From contig RBZT01000563.1 in assembly GCA_003693705.1 (NCBI GenBank), positions 152,055-216,054 of the forward strand: a stretch of 64,000 nucleotides of DNA. The letters run 5' to 3'. Origin of the DNA: Polymyxa betae A26-41. Its lineage: Eukaryota; Protista; Endomyxa: Phytomyxea. Positions 25,790 through 37,707 of the stretch are shown here, in pieces (positions within the stretch are counted from its first letter, which is position 1; each line of letters opens with the position of its first letter). The notes under the pieces were generated by a model that did no database searches, was not told the DNA's origin, and saw nothing but the letters and a program-made list of their open reading frames with translations. The position numbers and the translations under genes are program-made.

Positions 25790-28700
25790 ATGCAGACTTT
25801 AGGCGTTGAGGAGAAAGCATTCTATTCGTTAGACGCCCAACAAGTGGCTAAGGAATTCAATGTCGATCTCGAAAAGGGCTTAAGTGCTGAAGAAGTCCAT
25901 GCACGATTGGAAAAATATGGGCCGAATGTGCTTTCAGGAAAAACGGCTGAAAGCATATGGATTCTGCTATTTCGACAGCTGGCCAATTCGATGACGCTTG
26001 TTCTTCTTGCGGCAACTGTGCTCTCATTTATTACGAAGGATTATGCTGAAGCCATCGTCGTTTTTCTCATCATCATCGCCAACACCTTCACCGGTCTGTA
26101 CCAAGAAATGAAAGCTGAAAAGACAATGTCTGCTTTGCGAAGTATGTCATCGCCAACCGCTAATGTATTAAGAGATGGTGAGCAGAAAACCATCCCTACA
26201 ATAGACTTGGTACCAGGTATGAATAACAACACGATATCGTATTAGCACGAAATGTTTTGTAGGTGATATACTTCTGTTGAAGAATGGAGACAATATTGGC
26301 GCTGATTGCAGGCTGATCTACAGTCAGATTCTTGGGATTGATGAAGCCCTCCTTACTGGGGAAACCCACCAAGTCGAAAAGCATACAGGAGTTATTGGGA
26401 GCGAGAAAGTCCCTGTTGGCGATCAGTTCAATATGGTGTTTTCCAGTACGACCGTGACGCAAGGACGAGGCAAAGGTCTGGTGGTTCGAACTGTAGGTTT
26501 GGATTATAGTAATGGATTTCAATGGTAATGTCGGTTTCTTCAGGGAATGGAATCAGAACTGGGAAAGATTGCTAAGTCTATGTTTGAGACCAAAACCAAC
26601 GATTCCAAAACCCCTTTGCAACGCTCGCTCGATAACATGGGAACGCTGCTGATCTTCGTTTCTGAAGTTCTTGCTCTGATCGTCTTCGCTGTGAACGACT
26701 TTGTATTTAATGTCAATGTCGTCCTGTACGCTGTTGCTGTCGCCATCGCCGTTATTCCTGAAGGTTCGCGCGCACGAATAGTTCTGCAATACTCAATCAA
26801 CAAACGTTATAGGCTTGATGGCCGTCGTCACTCTGACAATGGCCTTGGGTATGCGTCAGATGTCAAAGCAGCGTGTTCTGGTCCGAAAACTGATCGCTCT
26901 GGAATCTCTCGGAAGGGTCACTAACGTTTGCTCTGATAAAACTGGCACCCTGACGCAAGCCGTTATGACCGTTACGAAAATCTGGCTCCCCGGCAATGGG
27001 GTTTATTCAGATGAGGTCCAACAGGGTGTCGACGTCTCCAAGGAAAAGGTCGTTGAACCACATGTCGAAAGTTTAATAGAGAATGGAACAAGTTCATTTC
27101 AGTTACTTGGAAAATGTGCATCATTATGCAATATGGCGGAGCTGAAATTTGATTCTGATGGTAATCTGCTGTATGGGATCGGAGATGCAACCGAAATCGC
27201 TCTACAAAAATTTGCTCACAAATACGATTTGGGAAAGAAAACAATTATTTCTGACGATGGCTATGATCTATGGGTCGAACATACGTTCGATTCTACTCAT
27301 AAGCGAATGGCTGTTGTCTATAAGAATCCACATGGTGAGGGCGCTGTAGTTTTTGTCAAAGGTGCGACAGAGAAGATCATGGGGCGATGTGTCGCGATTC
27401 AAAGAGCAAACAAGGCCTGTCCAATGTCCTATGAAGAATTGGCTAATGAGATCCTGCCGGTTGTGCAAAGGTTATCATCTCAGGGAATGAGAACTATATC
27501 ATTAGCGATGCGCTACTTGGAGAACGTCTCATGTATGGACGCTGCGAAAGAGATCCCTCGTGGGGAAGTCGAGTCGAAGTTAATGTTCCTTGGACTTGCC
27601 GGTATCACTGATCCTCCCCGACCAGAGAGCAGAGCCAGTGTCGATCTGTGCCACGAAGCTGGAATAACCGTTCACATGTTGACTGGAGATCACCTCATGA
27701 CGGCAGTGGCGATCGCGCGACAAGTCGGTATCTTGCCATCATTGGGTGACGTACGAGAAGGTGAAAGTCTATGCATTATGGAGGATGAGAACTGTCTGGT
27801 GATGACTTCATCTGAGTTTGATCACATGACCGACAATCAAATCGGTAGGTAACCAGATCTTATTCTGTCTTTGCCTAAAGTGTTGCAGATGCTCTCACGG
27901 ATCTGCCGAAGGTTATTGCAAGATGCAGTCCACAAACGAAAGTTCGAATGATTCAGGCTCTTCATCGAAGAGGATGTATTGTGGCTATGACTGGAGATGG
28001 TGTCAACGATTCTCCCAGCTTGAAGTTAGCTGATGTTGGGATCTCCATGGGACAGAATAGCTCCGACGTTGCCAAACAAGCGTCCGATATCGTCTTGACT
28101 GATAATAATTTCGCCAGTATCGTCAATGCAATTGCAGAGGGACGTCGTATATTCAGAAATATCCAGCGATTCGTTGCTGTATTGATTGGCGGAAATGTAG
28201 CCGAACTATTTGTTCTGATGCTTGGTTTGTCGTTCGTCGACTCTAGTGGTCATTCCGTATTTCCATTATCACCTATCCAGATTCTAGTTAACAATATGGT
28301 CAGGAGAAGACCTATTACTACGTGCTATATCTTACATCTGATTAACTAGGTAACTGGAACTCCATCCGCGCTAGCGCTTGGTATGGAGAAGAAAACGCCT
28401 GATGCCATGAAAAGGCCTCCTCGATCGGCAAAGCTCGGGCTCTTCGACGCCGAACTCGTCACTGATATCATTTTCTATGGTTGTATTATTGGTGCAATCA
28501 CACTCTTCGATTTCTATGCAACTATTCACTGGTTCGGGAATGGAGTTCTTGGATCTGAATGCGACGTCAATTTTACCGACCGATGCAACGATCTGTATCA
28601 AGCTCGCGGTGTCGTGTTTGCAGCATTGACAATCTTGATGCTTCTGCACACATATAACTGTCGTGATATTCGAGGTCGTATGTGGAATATGGCAGGGCTA

Positions 28701-28919
28701 CGTCGGTTCTTTGATAATCCCTCCATTACCAATGCTGTGGTTATCGGATGCTCCATTGCTATCGTATCGCTCTACATCCCTGGACTCAATGATAGAGTGT
28801 TCAAGCAGATCGGGTTTGTAGCTGAATGGAGTCTGGTTTTCGTTTCCATTCTTGTCTTCATTGTAATTTCCGAATTGTACAAAATATTCAAGACCTGGCT
28901 TCTCCCTCCGTTCCATTAG
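25790..28919 (+). CDS. ENA: ENA-type (P2D) Na+/K+-exporting P-type ATPase, copy 1
   Basis: DEALLTGE, AVIPEGL, CSDKTGTLTQ, FDSTHKRM, KGATE, DPPRPES, HMLTGDH, ARCSPQTKVRMI.ALH, MTGDGVNDSPSLK, VFPLSPIQIL; 5 introns. MLTGDH, NDSPSLK and VFPLSP are typical of ENA pumps. Confidence 0.9.
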
Positions 28920-29730
28920 TCATTTACCATTATATATCATTGTAGAACTGAGGGAGGGCGCAATCTGAATCTAACTGCAACTAATACGTTTTACAACAGA
29001 TAGGCGAGCTGAATACGTGAACATGTTTTCTGTATAAATATTGTCTTTTTGTAATTCAAAAGTTTTCAAATTTGCTACCGATGGGCCTCGACGAGCTGTT
29101 TCGACCTCTGTACTGTACAGAACGATTGACCTAACAGCAGCTTTTTCAACAGCCCTCCTGCATTTGAGAGGTGTCAGAAGGTTGCATTGGCAAATTCCCA
29201 GGCAGACAGGCAAGCGAATAATTCCGGATCAAATCTCTCCATGTTTGAACAGACGACGGAACCGAACCTTAAGCCGGCAGGATTCAGATAATACAGAGAT
29301 GAAGCGACTCCAGTAACGAAATCATCTTCTTTTGGAAATGTCTCGGAGGCTGCTCCGCTGCCTTGGCTTTTCTAGTCTGTAGATAGGCTATAGGCAGGAT
29401 CAGAACCAAACTTCATGGGCACCCATGCAGAAATCTGGGTTCAGAGACACTCATTTTTAAATCGATATTCGAGGCTAGCTCATAAGCGCGCCTGAAAATC
29501 CTCATGTTAGCAGAAGAGATTGTGTCAAACGAATCATAGGCTGGATAGAGCCTGTTTGTATCAACTCAAGGAAAGTTTCCTTAACTTGGCGAATCGACAG
29601 AACTCAGCCTCATCGCTCCGTATGTTGCCATTAGCAAGAAAATAGTTAATTTCTGTCAGGTTCTGTCCACTATGTTCTGGTTTCAATCTCCGAATCATGC
29701 GTTCATCGATCTTCAAGCTCTGTTCAGAAT

Positions 29731-32700
29731 ATGAACCGAGCCTACCATACCTTAACTGTCGACCAAATCCTGGCCGAATTATGTGTTGATCCAGATATCG
29801 GTTTATCTGACAAAGAGATCAACGATCGATTCCAGAAATATGGCCCGAATGCGCTTTTTAAAGAAAAGACTGAAAGCCCATGGATTCTACTCTTCAATCA
29901 GCTGGCCAATTCTATGACCTTTGTTCTAATTGTCGCAACTGTTCTGGCGTTCGTCACCCAAGATTTCGCTGAAGCCATTGTTGTTCTACTGATCATCATC
30001 GCCAATACTTTGATTGGTTTCTATCAAGATTATAAAGCTGAAAAGACAATGGCTGCTTTACGAAGTATGGCATCACCGACTGCTAATGTATTAAGAAACG
30101 GCGAACCAAAACACATTCCTGCATCAGAGGTGGTTCCAGGTATTCAACCAAAACCCGATTTCATTGATTTCTGAGTCTCACTTCCAAGGCGATATTCTTC
30201 TTTTGAAGGGCGGTGATAATGTTGGGGCTGATAGTAGGCTGATCACCTGCCATAGTATTGGTGCTGATGAGGCTCTGCTTACTGGCGAGACCCATCAAAT
30301 CGAGAAGCATTGCGATGTGATTGAAGAAGAGCAGGTTCCTGTTGGTGATCAACACAATATGGTATTCGCAAGCACAACGGTGACACAAGGTAGAGGACGT
30401 GGCGTCGTTGTACGAACTGTAAGTCTGTCCTTTGGTGACGTCGCTTTACTCAATCCGATCGTTTCAGGGAATGTACACGGAGCTGGGTAAAATCGCCAAA
30501 TCGATGTTCGAGACGAAATCGCGAGAATCTCAAACCCCATTGCAACGCTCGCTTAGTAATATGGGGCTCGTGTTATTAGCTGTGGCAGTCGTGTTTGCAG
30601 TCATTATTTTTGCTGCGAACGGATTTGACGTGACGGTGAGCGTTCTTCTCTATGCTGTTGCTGTTGCGATTGCTGTCATTCCTGAAGGTCCCAGATCACA
30701 ATTCGTCCGTGCTAATTGATTTAATCGCATTTAGGTTTAATCGCCATTGTGACTTTGACGATGGCCCTGGGAATGCGTCAAATGGCCAGGCAGCGTGTTC
30801 TGGTTCGAAGACTGATCGCTCTGGAGCTGCTGGGAAGAGTCACAAATGTCTGCTCTGATAAGACCGGCACCTTAACTCAGGCCATCATGACTGTTTCGAA
30901 AATCTGGCTTCCTGATATTGGGATCTATTCAGATGAGGTCTCGCAGACCTCGGAGCCACTGAAAGAGACAGCTGGAGAATCAACCTCCATCCAATCATTG
31001 GTTGAGAACAGAATAAGCTCCTTCTTGCTTTTCGTGAAATGTTCATCCTTATGTAATATGGCTGAATTGAAGTTCGATGACAGTAATCACCTCATCTCTG
31101 GTATTGGAGACGCCACCGAAATCGCCTTGCAAAAGTTTGCTCACAAGTACGAGTTCGACAAGCAGAAGATAATCTCCGAGGAAGGATGGGAGCTATGGGT
31201 GGAACATGCGTTCGATTCTCATCATAAAAGAATGTCGGTGATCTATCACCATCCGCATGATCATGAAACTGTGATCTTCACAAAGGGCGCTCCTGAAAGG
31301 GTATTGGCTCGGTGTATGTTCATCCGACGAACAGACCAAATCTCTCCAGCATCATTCGAGGAATTATCGAATGAGGTTCTGCCGGTCGTGCAAAGATTAT
31401 CGTCGCAGGGCATGAGGACTATAGCGCTAGCGATGCGTTATCTGGACAATGGCACATCAATGAACTCAGCCAAAAAAATCCCCCGGAAGGAAGTTGAATC
31501 GAAGCTGATCTTTATTGGACTTGCTGGTATCAGTGATCCTCCTCGACCTGAAAGTAAGCTCAGCGTTGCAATGTGCTATGATGCTGGAATCACGGTTCAC
31601 ATGCTGACGGGAGATCATCTGCTGACAGCAGTTGCTATAGCTCGACAGGTTGGTATATTACCCTCATTGGATCAAACATATTATCAGGAATCTCGATACA
31701 TGCTCGAGGAAGAGAAAGAATACGTCATGACATCCACTGAATTCGATAACATGACTGATAACCAGCTCAGTATGATCATCACTTTTATTTGATCGATAAT
31801 ATGCTAACTTACAGCAGATGCTCTGGAGACTTTACCGAAGGTTATAGCCAGGTGTAGCCCCCAGACGAAAGTTCGAATGATTAAGGCTCTTCATCGAAGA
31901 GGATGTATTGTGGCTATGACTGGAGATGGTGTTAATGATTCTCCCAGCTTGAAGTTAGCTGATGTTGGGATCTCCATGGGACAGAATAGCTCCGATGTCG
32001 CCAAACAGGCGTCCGATATCGTCTTGACTGATAATAACTTCGCCAACATCGTCAACGGCATCGCCGAAGGACGTCGTATTTTCAAAAACATCCAGCGATT
32101 TGTTGTTGTTCTGGTCGGGGGAAATATAGCCGAACTGTTCGTTCTGATGATCGGGTTGGCGTTCGTCGCCAATGGGCACTCTGTGTTCCCGTTGTCACCG
32201 ATCCAGATTTTAGTGAACAACCTTGTAGCTGAGCCAATCAATGCTTAGATGCCTTAACTGATCTTTTTCATAGGTGACGGGAACGCCCTCGGCGTTAGGG
32301 CTTGGAATGGAGAAGAAATCACCCGATACGATGCAACAGCCCCCTCGAAACGCCAAGTTGGGGCTTTTTGACATCGAGCTTATTACAGATATATTTTTCT
32401 ATGGATGCGTCATTGGGGCGATCACGCTCTTCGATTTTCAAGCAACTGTTCAATGGTTCGGTGATGGATATCTTGCACCGGATTGCGATTTCGTTTTCAC
32501 TGACCAGTGCAATACTCTATATCGAGCACGTGGTGTTGCATTCGCAGTATTGACAGTTTTAATGCTGCTGCATACATATAACTGCCGAGACCTTCGCGGT
32601 CGAATGTGGAATGTTGCAGGAATGCGACGGTTTTTTGACAACCATGCCATTACGGTGGCTGTTGCGATCGGTTGTTCAATTGTGGTTATATCGCTCTATG

Positions 32701-32843
32701 TCCCAGTTCTGAACAACAAGGTTTTTAAGCAACTCGGATTTGATGCCGAATGGAGTTTGGTTTTCGCCTCGATTTTCGTGTTTATTGTAATTTCGGATCT
32801 GTATAAGGTGGGGAAATGTTGGGTCCTGCGACGTCTCCATTGA
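29731..32843 (+). CDS. ENA: ENA-type (P2D) P-type ATPase, copy 2 (tandem paralog)
   Basis: Same motifs and the same 5 intron positions as copy 1; intact reading frame after splicing. Confidence 0.9.
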
Positions 32844-32953
32844 AGGGGCAGTTGCTTATGCTTATTGTTAAGTAAAAACCATGGACTACCATATACATAC
32901 CAATACAAATGTTTTACAATACTGTATACTCAACAGATTGTTCAAGATAAATC

Positions 32954-34007
32954 CTGGAAGATCATAAGACTCTTGTTATGACATTTGATGAATTCGACAG
33001 TATGATGTATCAAATCGGTAAAGAACAATATCTGCTTTCTTTGAACTGGCCCTTTTGCTAATAGCTTGCAGATGCTCTCGTGAATCTTCCGAAAATTTCA
33101 GCCAGGCGTAGCTCCCAGACGAGAGTTCGAATGATTCAGGCTCTTCATCGAAGAGGATGTATTGTGGCTATGACTGGAGATGGTGTTAATGCTTCTCCCA
33201 TCTTGAAGTTAGCTGATGTTGGGATCTTCCTGGGACAAAACAGCACCGATGTTGCCAAACAGGCATCCGATATCGTCTTGACTGATAAAGATTTCTGCCA
33301 ACATCGTCAACGGCATTGCAGAAGGACGTCGTATTTGCAGAGATATTCAGCGATTCATTGTTGTTCTGGTCGGGGAAAATATAGCCGAACTGTTCGTTGT
33401 AGTGATTGGCCTAGCCTTCGTCGATGTTGCTGGCCATTCTGTGTTTCCGTTAACGCCGATCTTGATTCTAGATAGTAGCCTGGTCATGAGGAGGAACTGT
33501 TCCTCCACTTTCTAATAGTTTCTGATGGATTAGGTGATTGGAACACCATCGACTTTTGCGCTTGGTATGGAGAACAATCTGAACATTCAATGAACCGCCT
33601 ACCCTGATGATTAAAGCTCGGTCTCTTCTAATGTTCATATGATTGGTGATTTCCATGACAATATTCAGTGGTTGGAATCCCAACTAGTTGCGACACGAGG
33701 TTTGGCAAATCACTGACGATTCGTATCGTGCTCTAGTAATGGTGATTGCTGGGTTGACGATCTTTCATGCTGTTGCATACATATCGCGATATCCGAGCAC
33801 TAATGTGGAGTATGAAAACATTCTTTGAGAATCCTGCCCATTACCCAAGCTGTGGCTATCGGCTGTTGTTCTGTCGTGATCATATCACAATACCTTCCAG
33901 GTTGGAACACCAAAGTCTTTCAACAGCGAGCATTTGCAGCACATCCACTGTTGTATTTTAATGCAATTTCTGAGTAATATAAAAAGTGTTGGATTCTTCC
34001 ACCATTT
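32954..34007 (+). pseudogene. 5'-truncated, frameshifted third ENA ATPase copy
   Basis: Homologous to the 3' third of copies 1 and 2 and retains intron positions. GDGVND is mutated to GDGVNA, there is a frameshift after LTDKDF, and further stops and deletions follow. Confidence 0.88.
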
Positions 34008-34045
34008 CTTCGAATACAGACATTAATCATAGGCCGAACGAGAAA

Positions 34046-34339
34046 TCAACGGTTCTGCTTGATTGGCTTGGTGAAGTGGCGCTTTGAAAGCCGATGCCGA
34101 CGTAGTTGGCCGATATCATGAAATGTTCTTGAGCAAACGTTGCATACTCGATCGACACCTTCGGCTGCACTGTTACTAGCCGGTTTCTTATCTGAAGCAA
34201 GGGTCAGCACAATCACCGACCGCCAACGACAGGCAGAAATACCTGATACCCAAGCCATAATTTGAAACTGGCCATGCACTGTCTTCACAGTTCGTTTGGT
34301 CCTGCGCCAAGCGCCTGGTGCAGCGGCGTTGTCAGCCAT
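34046..34339 (-). CDS. 80-aa microprotein: YY1-REPO/2W-hairpin-like motif plus one C2H2 zinc finger
   Basis: ATG 34339; in-frame 51-nt intron 34192-34242 (GTATTT..GCTGAC..TTCAG). Product is ..WRRTKRTVKTVHGQFQIMAWVSDKK..CNVCSRTFHDIGQLRRHRLSKRH.. Confidence 0.75.
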   Translation of the reverse strand: MADNAAAPGAWRRTKRTVKTVHGQFQIMAWVSGISACRWRSVIVLTLASDKKPASNSAAEGVDRVCNVCSRTFHDIGQLRRHRLSKRHFTKPIKQNR

Positions 34340-34721
34340 AGAGCATTGAGGTAGAATGGCATTATTTGATGCGGGATTACGTCGTTAAGATGCGTTACAC
34401 AGTCCCATTAGGGTTCATATCACACCAATCGACCATGTGGTTGTATGATACTGATTACGGCAGGACGGCAGCCCAGCTTCATTAGAGGTGCTCTTCCACA
34501 CTGAACGTAGGAGGCTGCTGCTATACCATCAACTGGCTCATCCGTCTCTCCAACCTCATTCGATGTTTTGTCCCCATTTGAGAGACAAACTCGGCTCATC
34601 TGGCGGCGTTTGCAAATGGTTTCCCATCAACAGTGGACGTTGTGACTTCAAGGATCATGTGTACTGTACTTGAATCGATGGGAAGTAGTACCGGTAGTGA
34701 ACCGGGTCGCGAACCTGCTTG

Positions 34722-35789
34722 ATGGCGACAGGACGAGGAAGGTCGCAGGCTGGGGCGTTCTCGGCCCAGTCGGCCCATCGAGATGATTATCGTCCGCCTC
34801 CATTACCGGCTGCACAGCCGAGTCCTGTCAACAGACCTAGACTGTTTATTCCCTTCACCGGCACCTCTACGTCAAGCGATTATCGAGCTTTTCCTCGCGA
34901 AGCGTTGCTATCTAGCTCTGTCAAACGTTCCGAGCCAATTACGAATCATATCGGCGATCGTTCGTCAGCAACCAAGTTTGATTGGTGTTCAACCAATCGC
35001 GAAGATTTTCGCTTTCATCAACGTCCGCCTGCAGAGACAGCAAAGCCTCCCTCACAGCGTCGTTTAGTTCTACCATTTACTGGCCAGAGCACCTCTCGAG
35101 CTGATTTTCAGGCTCCGCCTTCTGAAGTTCTTCGCAGCAGTCGACCCGGATCTGCTGCCCTGAAATCGTTCAATGATAGGGATAATATCCATGTTACAGA
35201 CTTGCTGGATGACGCCAAGTTTGAGGGTTCTTCTTCTTATACCAGCGAATATAAGCCCATACCTTTACCGCTTTCTCAGACGCTTTCTCAACCGACCCTC
35301 GAATATGTTCCTTCTCAAGAGCCGCCGTTGCGATTCGAAGGCGTTTCCGAGAGCCATTCGCAGTATCGCTCGATTGAGCTAGAGAAGGGGCACCGAACGC
35401 CTATTGATAGCAAGACGTTCATTAGCTCGATATCCAGTCCAGGTTCCATGTTTGAGGCAACGACAGAGTTTCGTGCAAGCTTTAAGCCGGTGCCATTGGA
35501 GAGACACAATATTGCTCTGGAGCCATATGTTATGGACGATTCCATTCCATTCGATGCGACGACGGAATCTAGAGCCAGTTACCGACCTTACGTTCTCAGT
35601 AAATCAGATGGAACTCCATCGGTATCTGGCAGAGCAAGCCCTGTATTCGAAGGGAATTCAGGCAGAGCAAGCCCTGTATTCGAAGGGAATTCAGGCAGAG
35701 CAAGCCCTGTATTCGAAGGGAATTCATCCCATCGTATTGATTATGTCCCATACTCAGATCAAAGCTGCAAACGTAATGACTCCTCATGA
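34722..35789 (+). CDS. SAXO/STOP-like microtubule-stabilising protein (Mn-motif repeats), start uncertain
   Basis: About 8 repeats of F-x-G/A-x-S/T-x4-D/E-Y/F: PFTGTSTSSSDY, PFTGQSTSRADF, FEGSSSYTSEY, FEGVSESHSQY, FEATTEFRASF, FDATTESRASY, FEGNSSHRIDY. Confidence 0.78.
   Translation: MATGRGRSQAGAFSAQSAHRDDYRPPPLPAAQPSPVNRPRLFIPFTGTSTSSDYRAFPREALLSSSVKRSEPITNHIGDRSSATKFDWCSTNREDFRFHQRPPAETAKPPSQRRLVLPFTGQSTSRADFQAPPSEVLRSSRPGSAALKSFNDRDNIHVTDLLDDAKFEGSSSYTSEYKPIPLPLSQTLSQPTLEYVPSQEPPLRFEGVSESHSQYRSIELEKGHRTPIDSKTFISSISSPGSMFEATTEFRASFKPVPLERHNIALEPYVMDDSIPFDATTESRASYRPYVLSKSDGTPSVSGRASPVFEGNSGRASPVFEGNSGRASPVFEGNSSHRIDYVPYSDQSCKRNDSS
35628..35726 (+). repeat. Perfect 33-bp x3 coding tandem repeat (GRASPVFEGNS)
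   Basis: ggcagagcaagccctgtattcgaagggaattca occurs three times. Confidence 0.97.
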
Positions 35790-35965
35790 CCTGGCGCTAT
35801 CACTTTTAATACAATTCAGACAATTTTCAAATGATCTTCATTCGTTCATCTATGACTGCCGAAAATTCACGTTGATCTCAAAAAAGTTCATTCGCCATCA
35901 TCAAGAATGGCCATTCCGAGAGGTTTTGTTGCTGATAGAATTTCCACAACAATATTGAACGATTC

Positions 35966-37707
35966 TCAGACTCGGAAGTCCAATGTTTCCGAATGAGTAC
36001 TTTCGCTAGATGCCGGATATATAGAGTCTTTCGGATTCGATGAAGGCTTCCAAATCGCATCAGCCACCCGACAAACGTCGACAGCAGCGGAAACATTATG
36101 GACACGAACGAAATCGTAGCCAGCTGCAACCGAAGCCGATATAGCAGCAGCTGTTCCCCAATCGCGATCTCGGGCTTCGCTCTTGCCTGTTATGAGACCC
36201 AGAAACCGCTTTCTTGAGGGGCCGATGAGCGACGGCCATGTCCAGTGTGGCTTCGTCCTCAGCAACTCAACATTCTGTTCAGCGTTCTTGGCGAATCCAA
36301 TCCCGGGGTCGGCCAGCAGATTATAACGGAATAGACCATGCCGCATTGCTCTCTGGCAACAGCTTTCAATGGAATCAGCGATCTCCTCGTGTAGGTTGTT
36401 ATACTGGTTGAGCTTGGTCATGCTCGCTGGATCTCCTCTCATATGCATGCATACATAAGGAACTTGTAGTTTCGCTGCAACTTTGAGCATATCGGGGTCA
36501 GCATTACCACCAGAGACATCGTTTATCTGTAACAGTTGAAAATCCTCATGCTGACGAAACCTGAACGATTTATTACCACGTGAGCCCCCGATCGAACGCT
36601 CTCCTCAGCGACGCGGGCGTGGAACGTATCGATAGAGATCAGAATTGATGGGTTCACAGAGCGAATGCGCTCTATCACCGGAATCACTCGTTCAAGTTCG
36701 GCTTCAACTGAAACGGGTTCAGCACCAGGGCGCGTTGATTGGCCTAAAACGCATTAAGAAGATACGATTCCTCAATGAAAATACAATCGCACCACCAACA
36801 TCGACAATATCGGCGCCTTGCCTCCATAATAATTCTGCATGTTCTGCAGCCAGATTCGAATCATAAAACTGTCCCCCATCGCTGAACGAATCTGGGGTCA
36901 CATTCACCTGGATTTACAGATTATTACGCATAGAAAACGGCTTTTGTGGTTTCACAATACGATTCCTATTATAAAGGTTCTTGTGCCCAATCTGAAAATA
37001 GAATCACCGATAGGTATGATTCGACAGATTTGCATTTGCTGCTCGGCAGGTAACTGATCAAGAAGTTTGCTGACAGTGAGACCATGGCCAGGAACTGAAT
37101 AATCAGGCTGAATATCGGCCCATGGTCGAAGCACGAACGCTCTTTGATGGGCTAAAGCGTGTGGAATCACCAAATCCGGTTGTGACACAACCGAGTCGCC
37201 ACTAAAGTTCATTCTTCAATGCTTCAAACATAAGAAAATCGAATATTCGATTCGTCCAAAACTCTGATTGAAAAAGACGAATACGTGCCAAGAAATGAGA
37301 TTAAAATCAGGATGTTTGATAAAACTTTTGCAATGGTTTAATGCTGCTGACCTGGCTATGATATCAAGATCGATGGGTCTTGGGCTCCTATATTACTAGA
37401 TAACGGTAAAGCCTTAAGCAGAAACAATAGATTACCATCGGGCTGCCGATAGGTCTCGTCCCAGACCAGATTCGATCGATTTCAAATGCTGTAGCAGATC
37501 GCGATGATGCAACTGCGTCTCGATCAGACACACCGTGTTTAGGAAGCGAGGCTGGCGGGTCGACGTCCCCCAAGGCTCGCTATCGTACAGGAACGAGGTC
37601 GCCTTGACCGCCGTCGTCGGCAAGGCGTTCAGGGCGAGCAGCGCCGAGCGGATGTTGGCGACCCGATTGCCGAGATTCGATCCCAGGCCGACTATTGCGG
37701 GCGTCAT
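35966..37707 (-). CDS. Bifunctional HPPK-DHPS (folate biosynthesis)
   Basis: HPPK: VGLGSNLG, QPRFLNTV, RWSPRPIDLDII, LVIPH..HQRAFVLRPWADI. DHPS: GIVNVTPDSFSDGG, DVGGQSTRPGA, SIDTF, INDVSGG, MHMRGDP, DPGIGFAK, GPSRKRF, VRVHNV; 5 introns. Confidence 0.95.

What the first reader, a model, noticed from the sequence alone, without database searches (positions are those of the whole stretch)
34046..34339. Minimal YY1-like microprotein: REPO/2W-hairpin plus a single C2H2 finger in 80 aa
Seen: removing a 51-nt intron gives WRRTKRTVKTVHGQFQIMAWVSDKK, followed about 13 aa later by CNVCSRTFHDIGQLRRHRLSKRH. Known: human YY1 REPO reads (from memory) [26 protein letters not shown]. The two align without gaps at W, I/V-K-T, G-x-F, V/I, W-x-S-D. 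This two-tryptophan hairpin class (YY1, Ies4, Rtt102, BCL7) docks on the Arp4/actin module of INO80 and SWI/SNF remodelers. The splice itself creates the W-x-S-D-K match, which supports the model. Inference: a stripped-down YY1/Ies4-type remodeler adaptor in a non-animal protist, with one finger rather than four. Its H-x5-H spacing is more like U1/JAZ RNA-binding fingers. A gene this small would be easily missed by annotation.
Basis: partly seen in the sequence, partly recalled or inferred. Interest (0 to 1): 0.8.

Follow-up and report, generated by a model that had tools for sequence, protein, structure and literature searches.

The report
Tiny one-finger YY1-like remodeler adaptor
The sugar-beet root parasite Polymyxa betae expresses an 80-amino-acid gene that looks like the animal and plant gene regulator YY1 cut down to its chromatin-remodeler docking hairpin plus one zinc finger, and it also carries a two-finger sister copy; the docking itself is inferred, not shown.

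Summary
The gene is real. It lies on the minus strand (34339-34046) in Polymyxa betae. Its 51-nt intron is removed exactly as predicted in two transcript assemblies from one study. Exon 2 holds one C2H2 finger above the Pfam cut-off.

A sister gene on contig C482 (131 aa, two fingers) keeps both tryptophans, KT-x-x-G, MAW-x-S, the same intron inside the same Asp codon, and the same H-x5-H last finger. The scan had noted that gene before (s1-665477); I found it independently.

The two-gene profile ranks PHO/YY1 REPO first in PDB (E 0.06). AlphaFold2 gives a confident beta-hairpin. Shape searches put PHO, YY1 and Ies4-type chains on top. Each hit is weak alone, but they agree.

Ino80, Arp8, Arp4 and actin are in the genome. 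No orthologue was found outside this species.

Best reading: a YY1-derived 2W-hairpin adaptor on actin-Arp4, most likely in INO80; binding and the protein itself are untested. YY1-type INO80 subunits are already reported in plants and a ciliate, so the new part is the reduction to one and two fingers.

The parts
34243..34339 (-). Exon 1 (32 codons + 1 nt); first in-frame ATG after an in-frame stop
34250..34309 (-). 2W/REPO-type beta-hairpin, Trp11 to Trp30 (18 residues between), strands 12-20 and 23-31
34192..34242 (-). 51-nt GT-AG intron, phase 1, splitting the Asp codon after W-x-S; same position in the C482 paralogue
   Evidence: (splice seen)
34046..34191 (-). Exon 2: short linker, finger, basic tail, stop (12 K+R vs 3 D+E)
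34076..34144 (-). Single C2H2 finger C-x2-C-x12-H-x5-H (Cys49, Cys52, His65, His71); counterpart of finger 2 of the paralogue

Best explanation
An expressed gene for an 80-aa protein, derived with its 131-aa two-finger paralogue (G000:C482:152911-153358, +) from a YY1/PHO-type ancestor. Shown: transcription and splicing, the finger motif, the paralogy, and protein-level constraint on hairpin and finger. Predicted: residues 11-31 fold as a two-stranded hairpin with Trp11 and Trp30 at its base. Inferred from Ies4/YY1 structures (PMC9733932): the two Trp clamp actin Pro367, the hairpin lies across the actin-Arp4 pair on the Ino80 HSA helix, and the lone finger with its basic tail, 18 residues away, is held near the linker DNA that this module reads. 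One finger is unlikely to give YY1-like sequence specificity, so the protein probably serves as an Ies4-like stabiliser with a weak nucleic-acid contact, alternating with the two-finger paralogue in the same slot.
For: Splice seen in two runs. Paralogue hairpin scores 51 vs next 28 among 195,579 windows, and its finger 2 is the best of 109 fingers, 68 vs 52: two separate tests point to one gene. Codon positions 1-2 are 55-61% identical, position 3 only 30-32%. Two-gene profile vs PDB: PHO 0.064, PHO 0.11, YY1 0.21 as the top three. Hairpin pLDDT about 90. Foldseek ranks 1-6 of 350,542 chains are PHO REPO and chain X of the Chaetomium INO80 A-module, taken to be Ies4. Atlas shape search: YY1-like cluster first, Ies4 cluster second. 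Paralogue fingers align best with the first two fingers of the YY1 chain 1ubd. Genome encodes Ino80 DBINO, Arp8, Arp4/ACTL6A-like, actins with the C-terminal Gly-Pro (34); no Pfam Ies4 and no four-finger YY1 in the finger loci inspected. YY1-type proteins sit in INO80 in plants and Tetrahymena.
Against: No single match is significant (best E 0.064; Foldseek E 0.7-2.3; VIA-align nothing). The paralogue's exon 1 alone does not find YY1. Foldseek uses sequence as well as shape, so it is not fully independent of phmmer; beta-hairpins are common. No orthologue in 1.84 billion representatives, metagenomes or the syntenic site of a relative. No protein, localisation or binding data. About 40 finger loci were not inspected. 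Which remodeler takes the hairpin cannot be read from sequence.
Confidence: 0.55

Rival explanations
1. Same hairpin and same actin-Arp4 docking, but in another remodeler: after duplication this copy fills the BCL7/Rtt102 slot of SWI/SNF (or an SWR1/NuA4 module) while the two-finger copy stays in INO80.
For: No Pfam BCL_N or Rtt102 match in the genome; a second HSA-domain protein exists on C355; the 2W-hairpin class serves all these complexes. Two paralogues exist for one INO80 slot.
Against: Sequence and shape matches go to YY1/PHO/Ies4, never BCL7 or Rtt102. The Pfam blanks are weak evidence: short, intron-split, divergent domains are missed and the controls did not ring. Swc4/DMAP1 is present for SWR1/NuA4.
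Confidence: 0.17
2. A YY1-derived competitor microprotein: it occupies the hairpin site (or another REPO partner) and so displaces the two-finger paralogue, switching off sequence-directed targeting at some life stage.
For: It keeps the docking element but has lost one of two fingers and changed two helix positions relative to the paralogue's finger 2; this is the usual anatomy of dominant-negative microproteins (own knowledge).
Against: The remaining finger is under constraint, which a pure competitor would not need. No MBT domain over the cut-off, so the Polycomb-type partner of REPO is not evident. No stage-resolved expression data.
Confidence: 0.1
3. The likeness to REPO is convergent. The pair is a lineage-specific family of small zinc-finger proteins, with a JAZ/U1-type finger binding RNA and a two-Trp hairpin binding some other proline-containing partner.
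For: Best Pfam family is zf-C2H2_jaz; all REPO scores are sub-significant; no outside relatives; language-model features see only the finger.
Against: The residues kept between the paralogues (W, V-K-T, G, W-x-S) are largely those shared with PHO/YY1, and adding the paralogue improved the match sevenfold (11 vs 69); hairpin-then-fingers order is that of YY1; Ies4-type hits appear without having been found by sequence.
Confidence: 0.1
4. A transcribed but decaying duplicate of the two-finger gene with no current protein function.
For: Absent from the syntenic site in a relative and lying next to a broken ATPase copy in a block that looks rearranged; a short out-of-frame ATG lies 7 nt before the start; not found elsewhere.
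Against: Third codon positions are near saturation while Trp, Cys and His and the open frame are intact; the intron is precisely spliced; the locus is identical over 509 nt in an independent assembly.
Confidence: 0.08

Closest known systems
YY1 / Drosophila Pleiohomeotic (PHO); plant AtYY1 and Populus YIN/YANG; Tetrahymena TTHERM_00239260
   Same: REPO hairpin with W-x18-W spacing, KT-x-x-G turn and W-x-S end, followed by C2H2 finger(s); top hits. Plant YY1 has REPO and associates with INO80 (PMC10146089); a four-finger YY1-like protein co-purifies with INO80 subunits in Tetrahymena (PMC12326766).
   Different: 80 aa and one finger (paralogue 131 aa, two) against four or five; 18-residue linker; no acidic activation region; last finger H-x5-H; no MBT partner evident.
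Ies4 (fungal INO80 subunit)
   Same: 2W-hairpin on actin-Arp4 in the INO80 A-module; Chaetomium A-module chain X and an Ies4 cluster rank just behind PHO/YY1 by shape.
   Different: Ies4 has no recognisable DNA-binding domain (PMC9733932); Pfam INO80_Ies4 does not match this protein or genome.
BCL7 / plant BDH / yeast Rtt102 (SWI/SNF hairpin subunits)
   Same: Two-Trp beta-hairpin class with the same Trp-Pro docking principle (PMC11761322).
   Different: No Pfam match, not returned by profile or shape search, and none of them carries a C2H2 finger to my knowledge.
JAZ/ZNF346 and matrin/U1-type zinc fingers
   Same: H-x5-H spacing; PF12171 over its cut-off.
   Different: No long inter-finger linkers or repeated JAZ fingers; the paralogue places this finger in a classical tandem pair; RNA binding untested.

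Membership tests
2W-hairpin/REPO remodeler clients | Two conserved tryptophans flanking the element | tested here: met
   Trp11 and Trp30 align with both PHO/YY1 Trp (11, 69) and are kept in the 28%-identical paralogue exon (65). Cross-species conservation could not be tested.
2W-hairpin/REPO remodeler clients | Two-stranded antiparallel beta-hairpin | tested here: met
   AlphaFold2 on the two-sequence alignment: strands 12-20 and 23-31, pLDDT about 90, five models 74-80 overall. A prediction from a shallow alignment; the single-sequence model of the unspliced ORF was uninformative.
2W-hairpin/REPO remodeler clients | Significant sequence/profile or structure match to a known member | tested here: inconclusive
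   Known members rank first in four searches, but best E is 0.064 (69), Foldseek E 0.7-2.3 (82), Atlas TM about 0.5 over 24 residues, VIA none.
2W-hairpin/REPO remodeler clients | Binds actin Pro367 and Arp4 on an HSA helix | not testable with these tools
   No multimer prediction or binding assay available. Partners are encoded and actin keeps Gly-Pro (23, 32, 34, 95).
YY1/PHO orthologues | REPO domain N-terminal to the fingers | tested here: met
YY1/PHO orthologues | Array of four C2H2 fingers binding the CCAT-core site | tested here: not met
   One finger, then stop; no further splice joints in the transcript contigs. Paralogue has two. So not filed as a canonical YY1.
YY1/PHO orthologues | Subunit of INO80 or partner of a 4MBT protein | not testable with these tools
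   INO80 module genes present; MBT only one sub-threshold hit.
Ies4 (PF08193) | Family HMM match; no DNA-binding domain | tested here: not met
   No Pfam match; carries a finger.
BCL7/BDH (PF04714), Rtt102 (PF09510) | Family HMM match | tested here: not met
JAZ-type finger (PF12171) | HMM score over curated cut-off, H-x5-H | tested here: met
   25.1 bits vs 22.6 (5); 24.8 in the genome scan. Classical finger 1 of the paralogue scores about the same, so the family label is not specific.
JAZ-type finger (PF12171) | Double-stranded RNA binding | not testable with these tools
   No assay.

The most novel reading that the evidence does not exclude
Plasmodiophorids reduced YY1 to two micro-paralogues that split the hairpin slots between them, one of them replacing the missing BCL7/Rtt102 in SWI/SNF, giving a finger-bearing SWI/SNF hairpin subunit that I found no description of, and natural intermediates between four-finger YY1 and finger-less Ies4.
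Probability: 0.17. Interest if true: 0.72.

Novelty: new variant of a known kind. Interest (0 to 1): 0.5.

Why it matters
Kunert et al. (PMC9733932) proposed that 2W-hairpin proteins are fast-evolving adaptors on a fixed actin-Arp4-HSA core, with YY1 (four fingers) and Ies4 (none) as the two ends. A natural one-finger and two-finger pair in Rhizaria would fill the gap between them and give a very small testable unit (80 aa) for asking what the fingers add to linker-DNA sensing by INO80. It extends the class to a group where I found no report of it. It also shows that such genes escape standard searches: Pfam, word search and a 1.84-billion-protein scan all missed the hairpin. It is not a new mechanism.

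Tried and rejected
Word search with the unspliced ORF: only the same gene on a 509-nt contig of another assembly. Large search with exon 1: itself plus P0002, a bacterial repeat protein whose score is 19 summed sub-2-bit matches, rejected. Two metagenome scans blank. Synteny: L049 has calcineurin directly beside the neighbour gene with no micro-gene; L051 ends before the position and its 53-aa ORF is unrelated. ATPase neighbour gave no close orthologue to follow. Atlas feature searches: nothing for exon 1, generic fingers for the ORF (17, 51). Single-sequence fold useless. VIA-align gave nothing for the 32-residue model. N-terminal extension rejected: in-frame stop upstream and no upstream joints. 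Third profile hit C617 (14.5 bits) lacks the second Trp, rejected. My recollection that human YY1 has an intron in the same Asp codon could not be confirmed in two paper searches.

Full report
Organism. The window's genome has 27,085,814 bases in 1,001 contigs. The Polymyxa betae draft is 1,001 contigs and 27,085,946 bp (PMC6328671). I take it to be this plasmodiophorid root parasite (Rhizaria). The gene has no sign of being a toxin or secreted effector.

Observation. The ORF runs on the minus strand from 34339 to 34046. The proposed intron (34242-34192) is 51 nt, GT..AG, phase 1, and in frame without a stop, so the unspliced ORF also reads through (97 aa). Contigs of runs X3 and X5 skip exactly these 51 bases. 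The same runs lack four GT-AG introns of the neighbouring folate gene, so they are transcript assemblies, although the library type is not recorded and both belong to one study. The contig also covers the divergent neighbour, so start site, strand and expression level are not shown. No other joint lies upstream to 35657 and an in-frame stop precedes the ATG, so the product is 80 aa. Exon 2 holds one C-x2-C-x12-H-x5-H finger above the PF12171 cut-off; exon 1 matches no Pfam family. Exon 1 alone returns three PDB chains at E<10, all PHO or YY1 REPO peptides, aligned without gaps, at E 0.46-0.79.

A paralogue supplies the missing conservation. No orthologue was found outside the species. While checking whether the genome has a canonical YY1, I scanned its C2H2 loci and found on contig C482 (L034) a gene of the same plan: a W-x18-W element sharing W, VKT, G and MAW-x-S (9 of 23 identical), then a predicted 52-nt GT-AG intron splitting the same Asp codon in the same phase, then two fingers, 131 aa in all. 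Against 195,579 six-frame windows from the loci held, its hairpin scores 51 and the next best 28; separately, its second finger is the best match to ours among 109 fingers, 68 against 52, and has the same H-x5-H spacing. First and second codon positions are 55-61% identical, third positions 30-32%: an old duplication with selection on the protein, on a small sample of 45 codons. A profile of both finds no third member. An earlier first-stage note (s1-665477, 448 letters, the same length) describes what must be this gene; I saw it after finding the gene.

What the hairpin is. The two-gene profile ranks PHO (E 0.064, 0.11) and YY1 (0.21) first in PDB. AlphaFold2 with that alignment gives a beta-hairpin, strands 12-20 and 23-31, pLDDT about 90. 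Foldseek's first six of 350,542 chains are three PHO REPO chains and three copies of chain X of the Chaetomium INO80 A-module, which I take to be Ies4 from the entry title and its length (E 0.7-2.3). The Atlas shape search lists a chordate YY1-like cluster first and an ascomycete Ies4 cluster second. None of these is significant alone, the searches share sequence signal, the paralogue's exon alone finds nothing relevant, and VIA-align reports nothing. The paralogue's finger pair aligns best with the first two fingers of the YY1 chain, though many finger proteins score higher in sum. I put descent from a YY1-type gene at about 0.85 and docking on actin-Arp4 at about 0.75 to 0.8.

Partners. The genome encodes the Ino80 DBINO domain, Arp8, an Arp4/ACTL6A-like gene, two actins that keep the C-terminal Gly-Pro the tryptophans clamp, Swc4/DMAP1 and a second HSA protein. 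Pfam finds no Ies4, BCL7 or Rtt102 and no MBT over cut-off; these blanks are weak. No four-finger YY1 appeared in the finger loci read, but about 40 were not read.

Mechanism. From the Ies4 and YY1 structures (PMC9733932) and the BDH tryptophan mutants (PMC11761322), the hairpin should bridge actin and Arp4 with both Trp on actin Pro367. The finger and basic tail would then sit near the linker DNA read by the INO80 A-module. One finger probably gives little sequence specificity (own knowledge), so I read it as a stabilising adaptor with a weak nucleic-acid contact, sharing the slot with the two-finger copy (0.55). Rivals: the same docking in SWI/SNF in place of BCL7 (0.17), a competitor of the two-finger copy (0.10), a convergent RNA-binding family (0.10), a decaying duplicate (0.08). 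All steps beyond transcription, splicing and homology are inferred.

Comparison with what is known. It works like a 2W-hairpin client. It is not filed as a canonical YY1, because the four-finger array is absent, nor as Ies4, BCL7 or Rtt102. YY1-type INO80 subunits outside animals are known: plant YY1 has REPO and binds INO80 (PMC10146089) and Tetrahymena INO80 includes a four-finger YY1-like protein (PMC12326766). I found no report of one- or two-finger forms or of any in Rhizaria. From memory, human YY1's first intron also falls in the Asp codon after W-S-S; two searches could not confirm this, so it is only a lead.

Limits. The joined spliced protein was translated once locally to check the observation but not sent to any search; searches used exons or the natural unspliced ORF by reference. 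The paralogue's intron has no read support yet. No multimer prediction was possible.

Verdict. Real, expressed, most likely a reduced YY1-type remodeler adaptor. New variant of a known kind; interest 0.5.

Noticed in passing
G000:C482:152911-153358 (+), L034:1230-1677: Two-finger paralogue (131 aa) with the same hairpin and intron position; predicted intron 153101-153152 not yet seen in reads.
   Followed up: yes
window 25790-33600 (+): Two full P-type Na+ (ENA-like) ATPase genes plus a frameshifted 3' partial copy (78-85% identical to them). Best relatives found are only 35-42% identical, the named ones fungal; the whole block, with the micro-gene, is absent between calcineurin and the next gene in the related locus L049.
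   Followed up: partly
A short tandem repeat near 35628-35726 is absent from both relatives and breaks the RNA contig.
   Followed up: partly
window 35815-37388 (-): Folate synthesis gene (pterin-binding domain): four introns confirmed by reads (50, 49, 53, 150 nt) and a poly(A)-like end at 35815 in X5; in X3 its contig extends to 35697, overlapping the 3' end of the convergent gene.
   Followed up: partly
L001 (assembly GCA_000510975.1, contig AYZY01101341.1): 509-nt contig 100% identical to window 34022-34530; I recall this accession as a sugar-beet assembly, which would make it parasite DNA contaminating a host genome. Not verified.
   Followed up: no
window 34346-34332 (-): A four-codon out-of-frame ORF starts 7 nt before the micro-gene's ATG and overlaps it; could damp translation if it is in the mRNA.
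   Followed up: no
G000:C885:33272-34505 (+), L008: Divergent actin-related gene, only weakly closer to Arp1 than to actin; subfamily unassigned.
   Followed up: no
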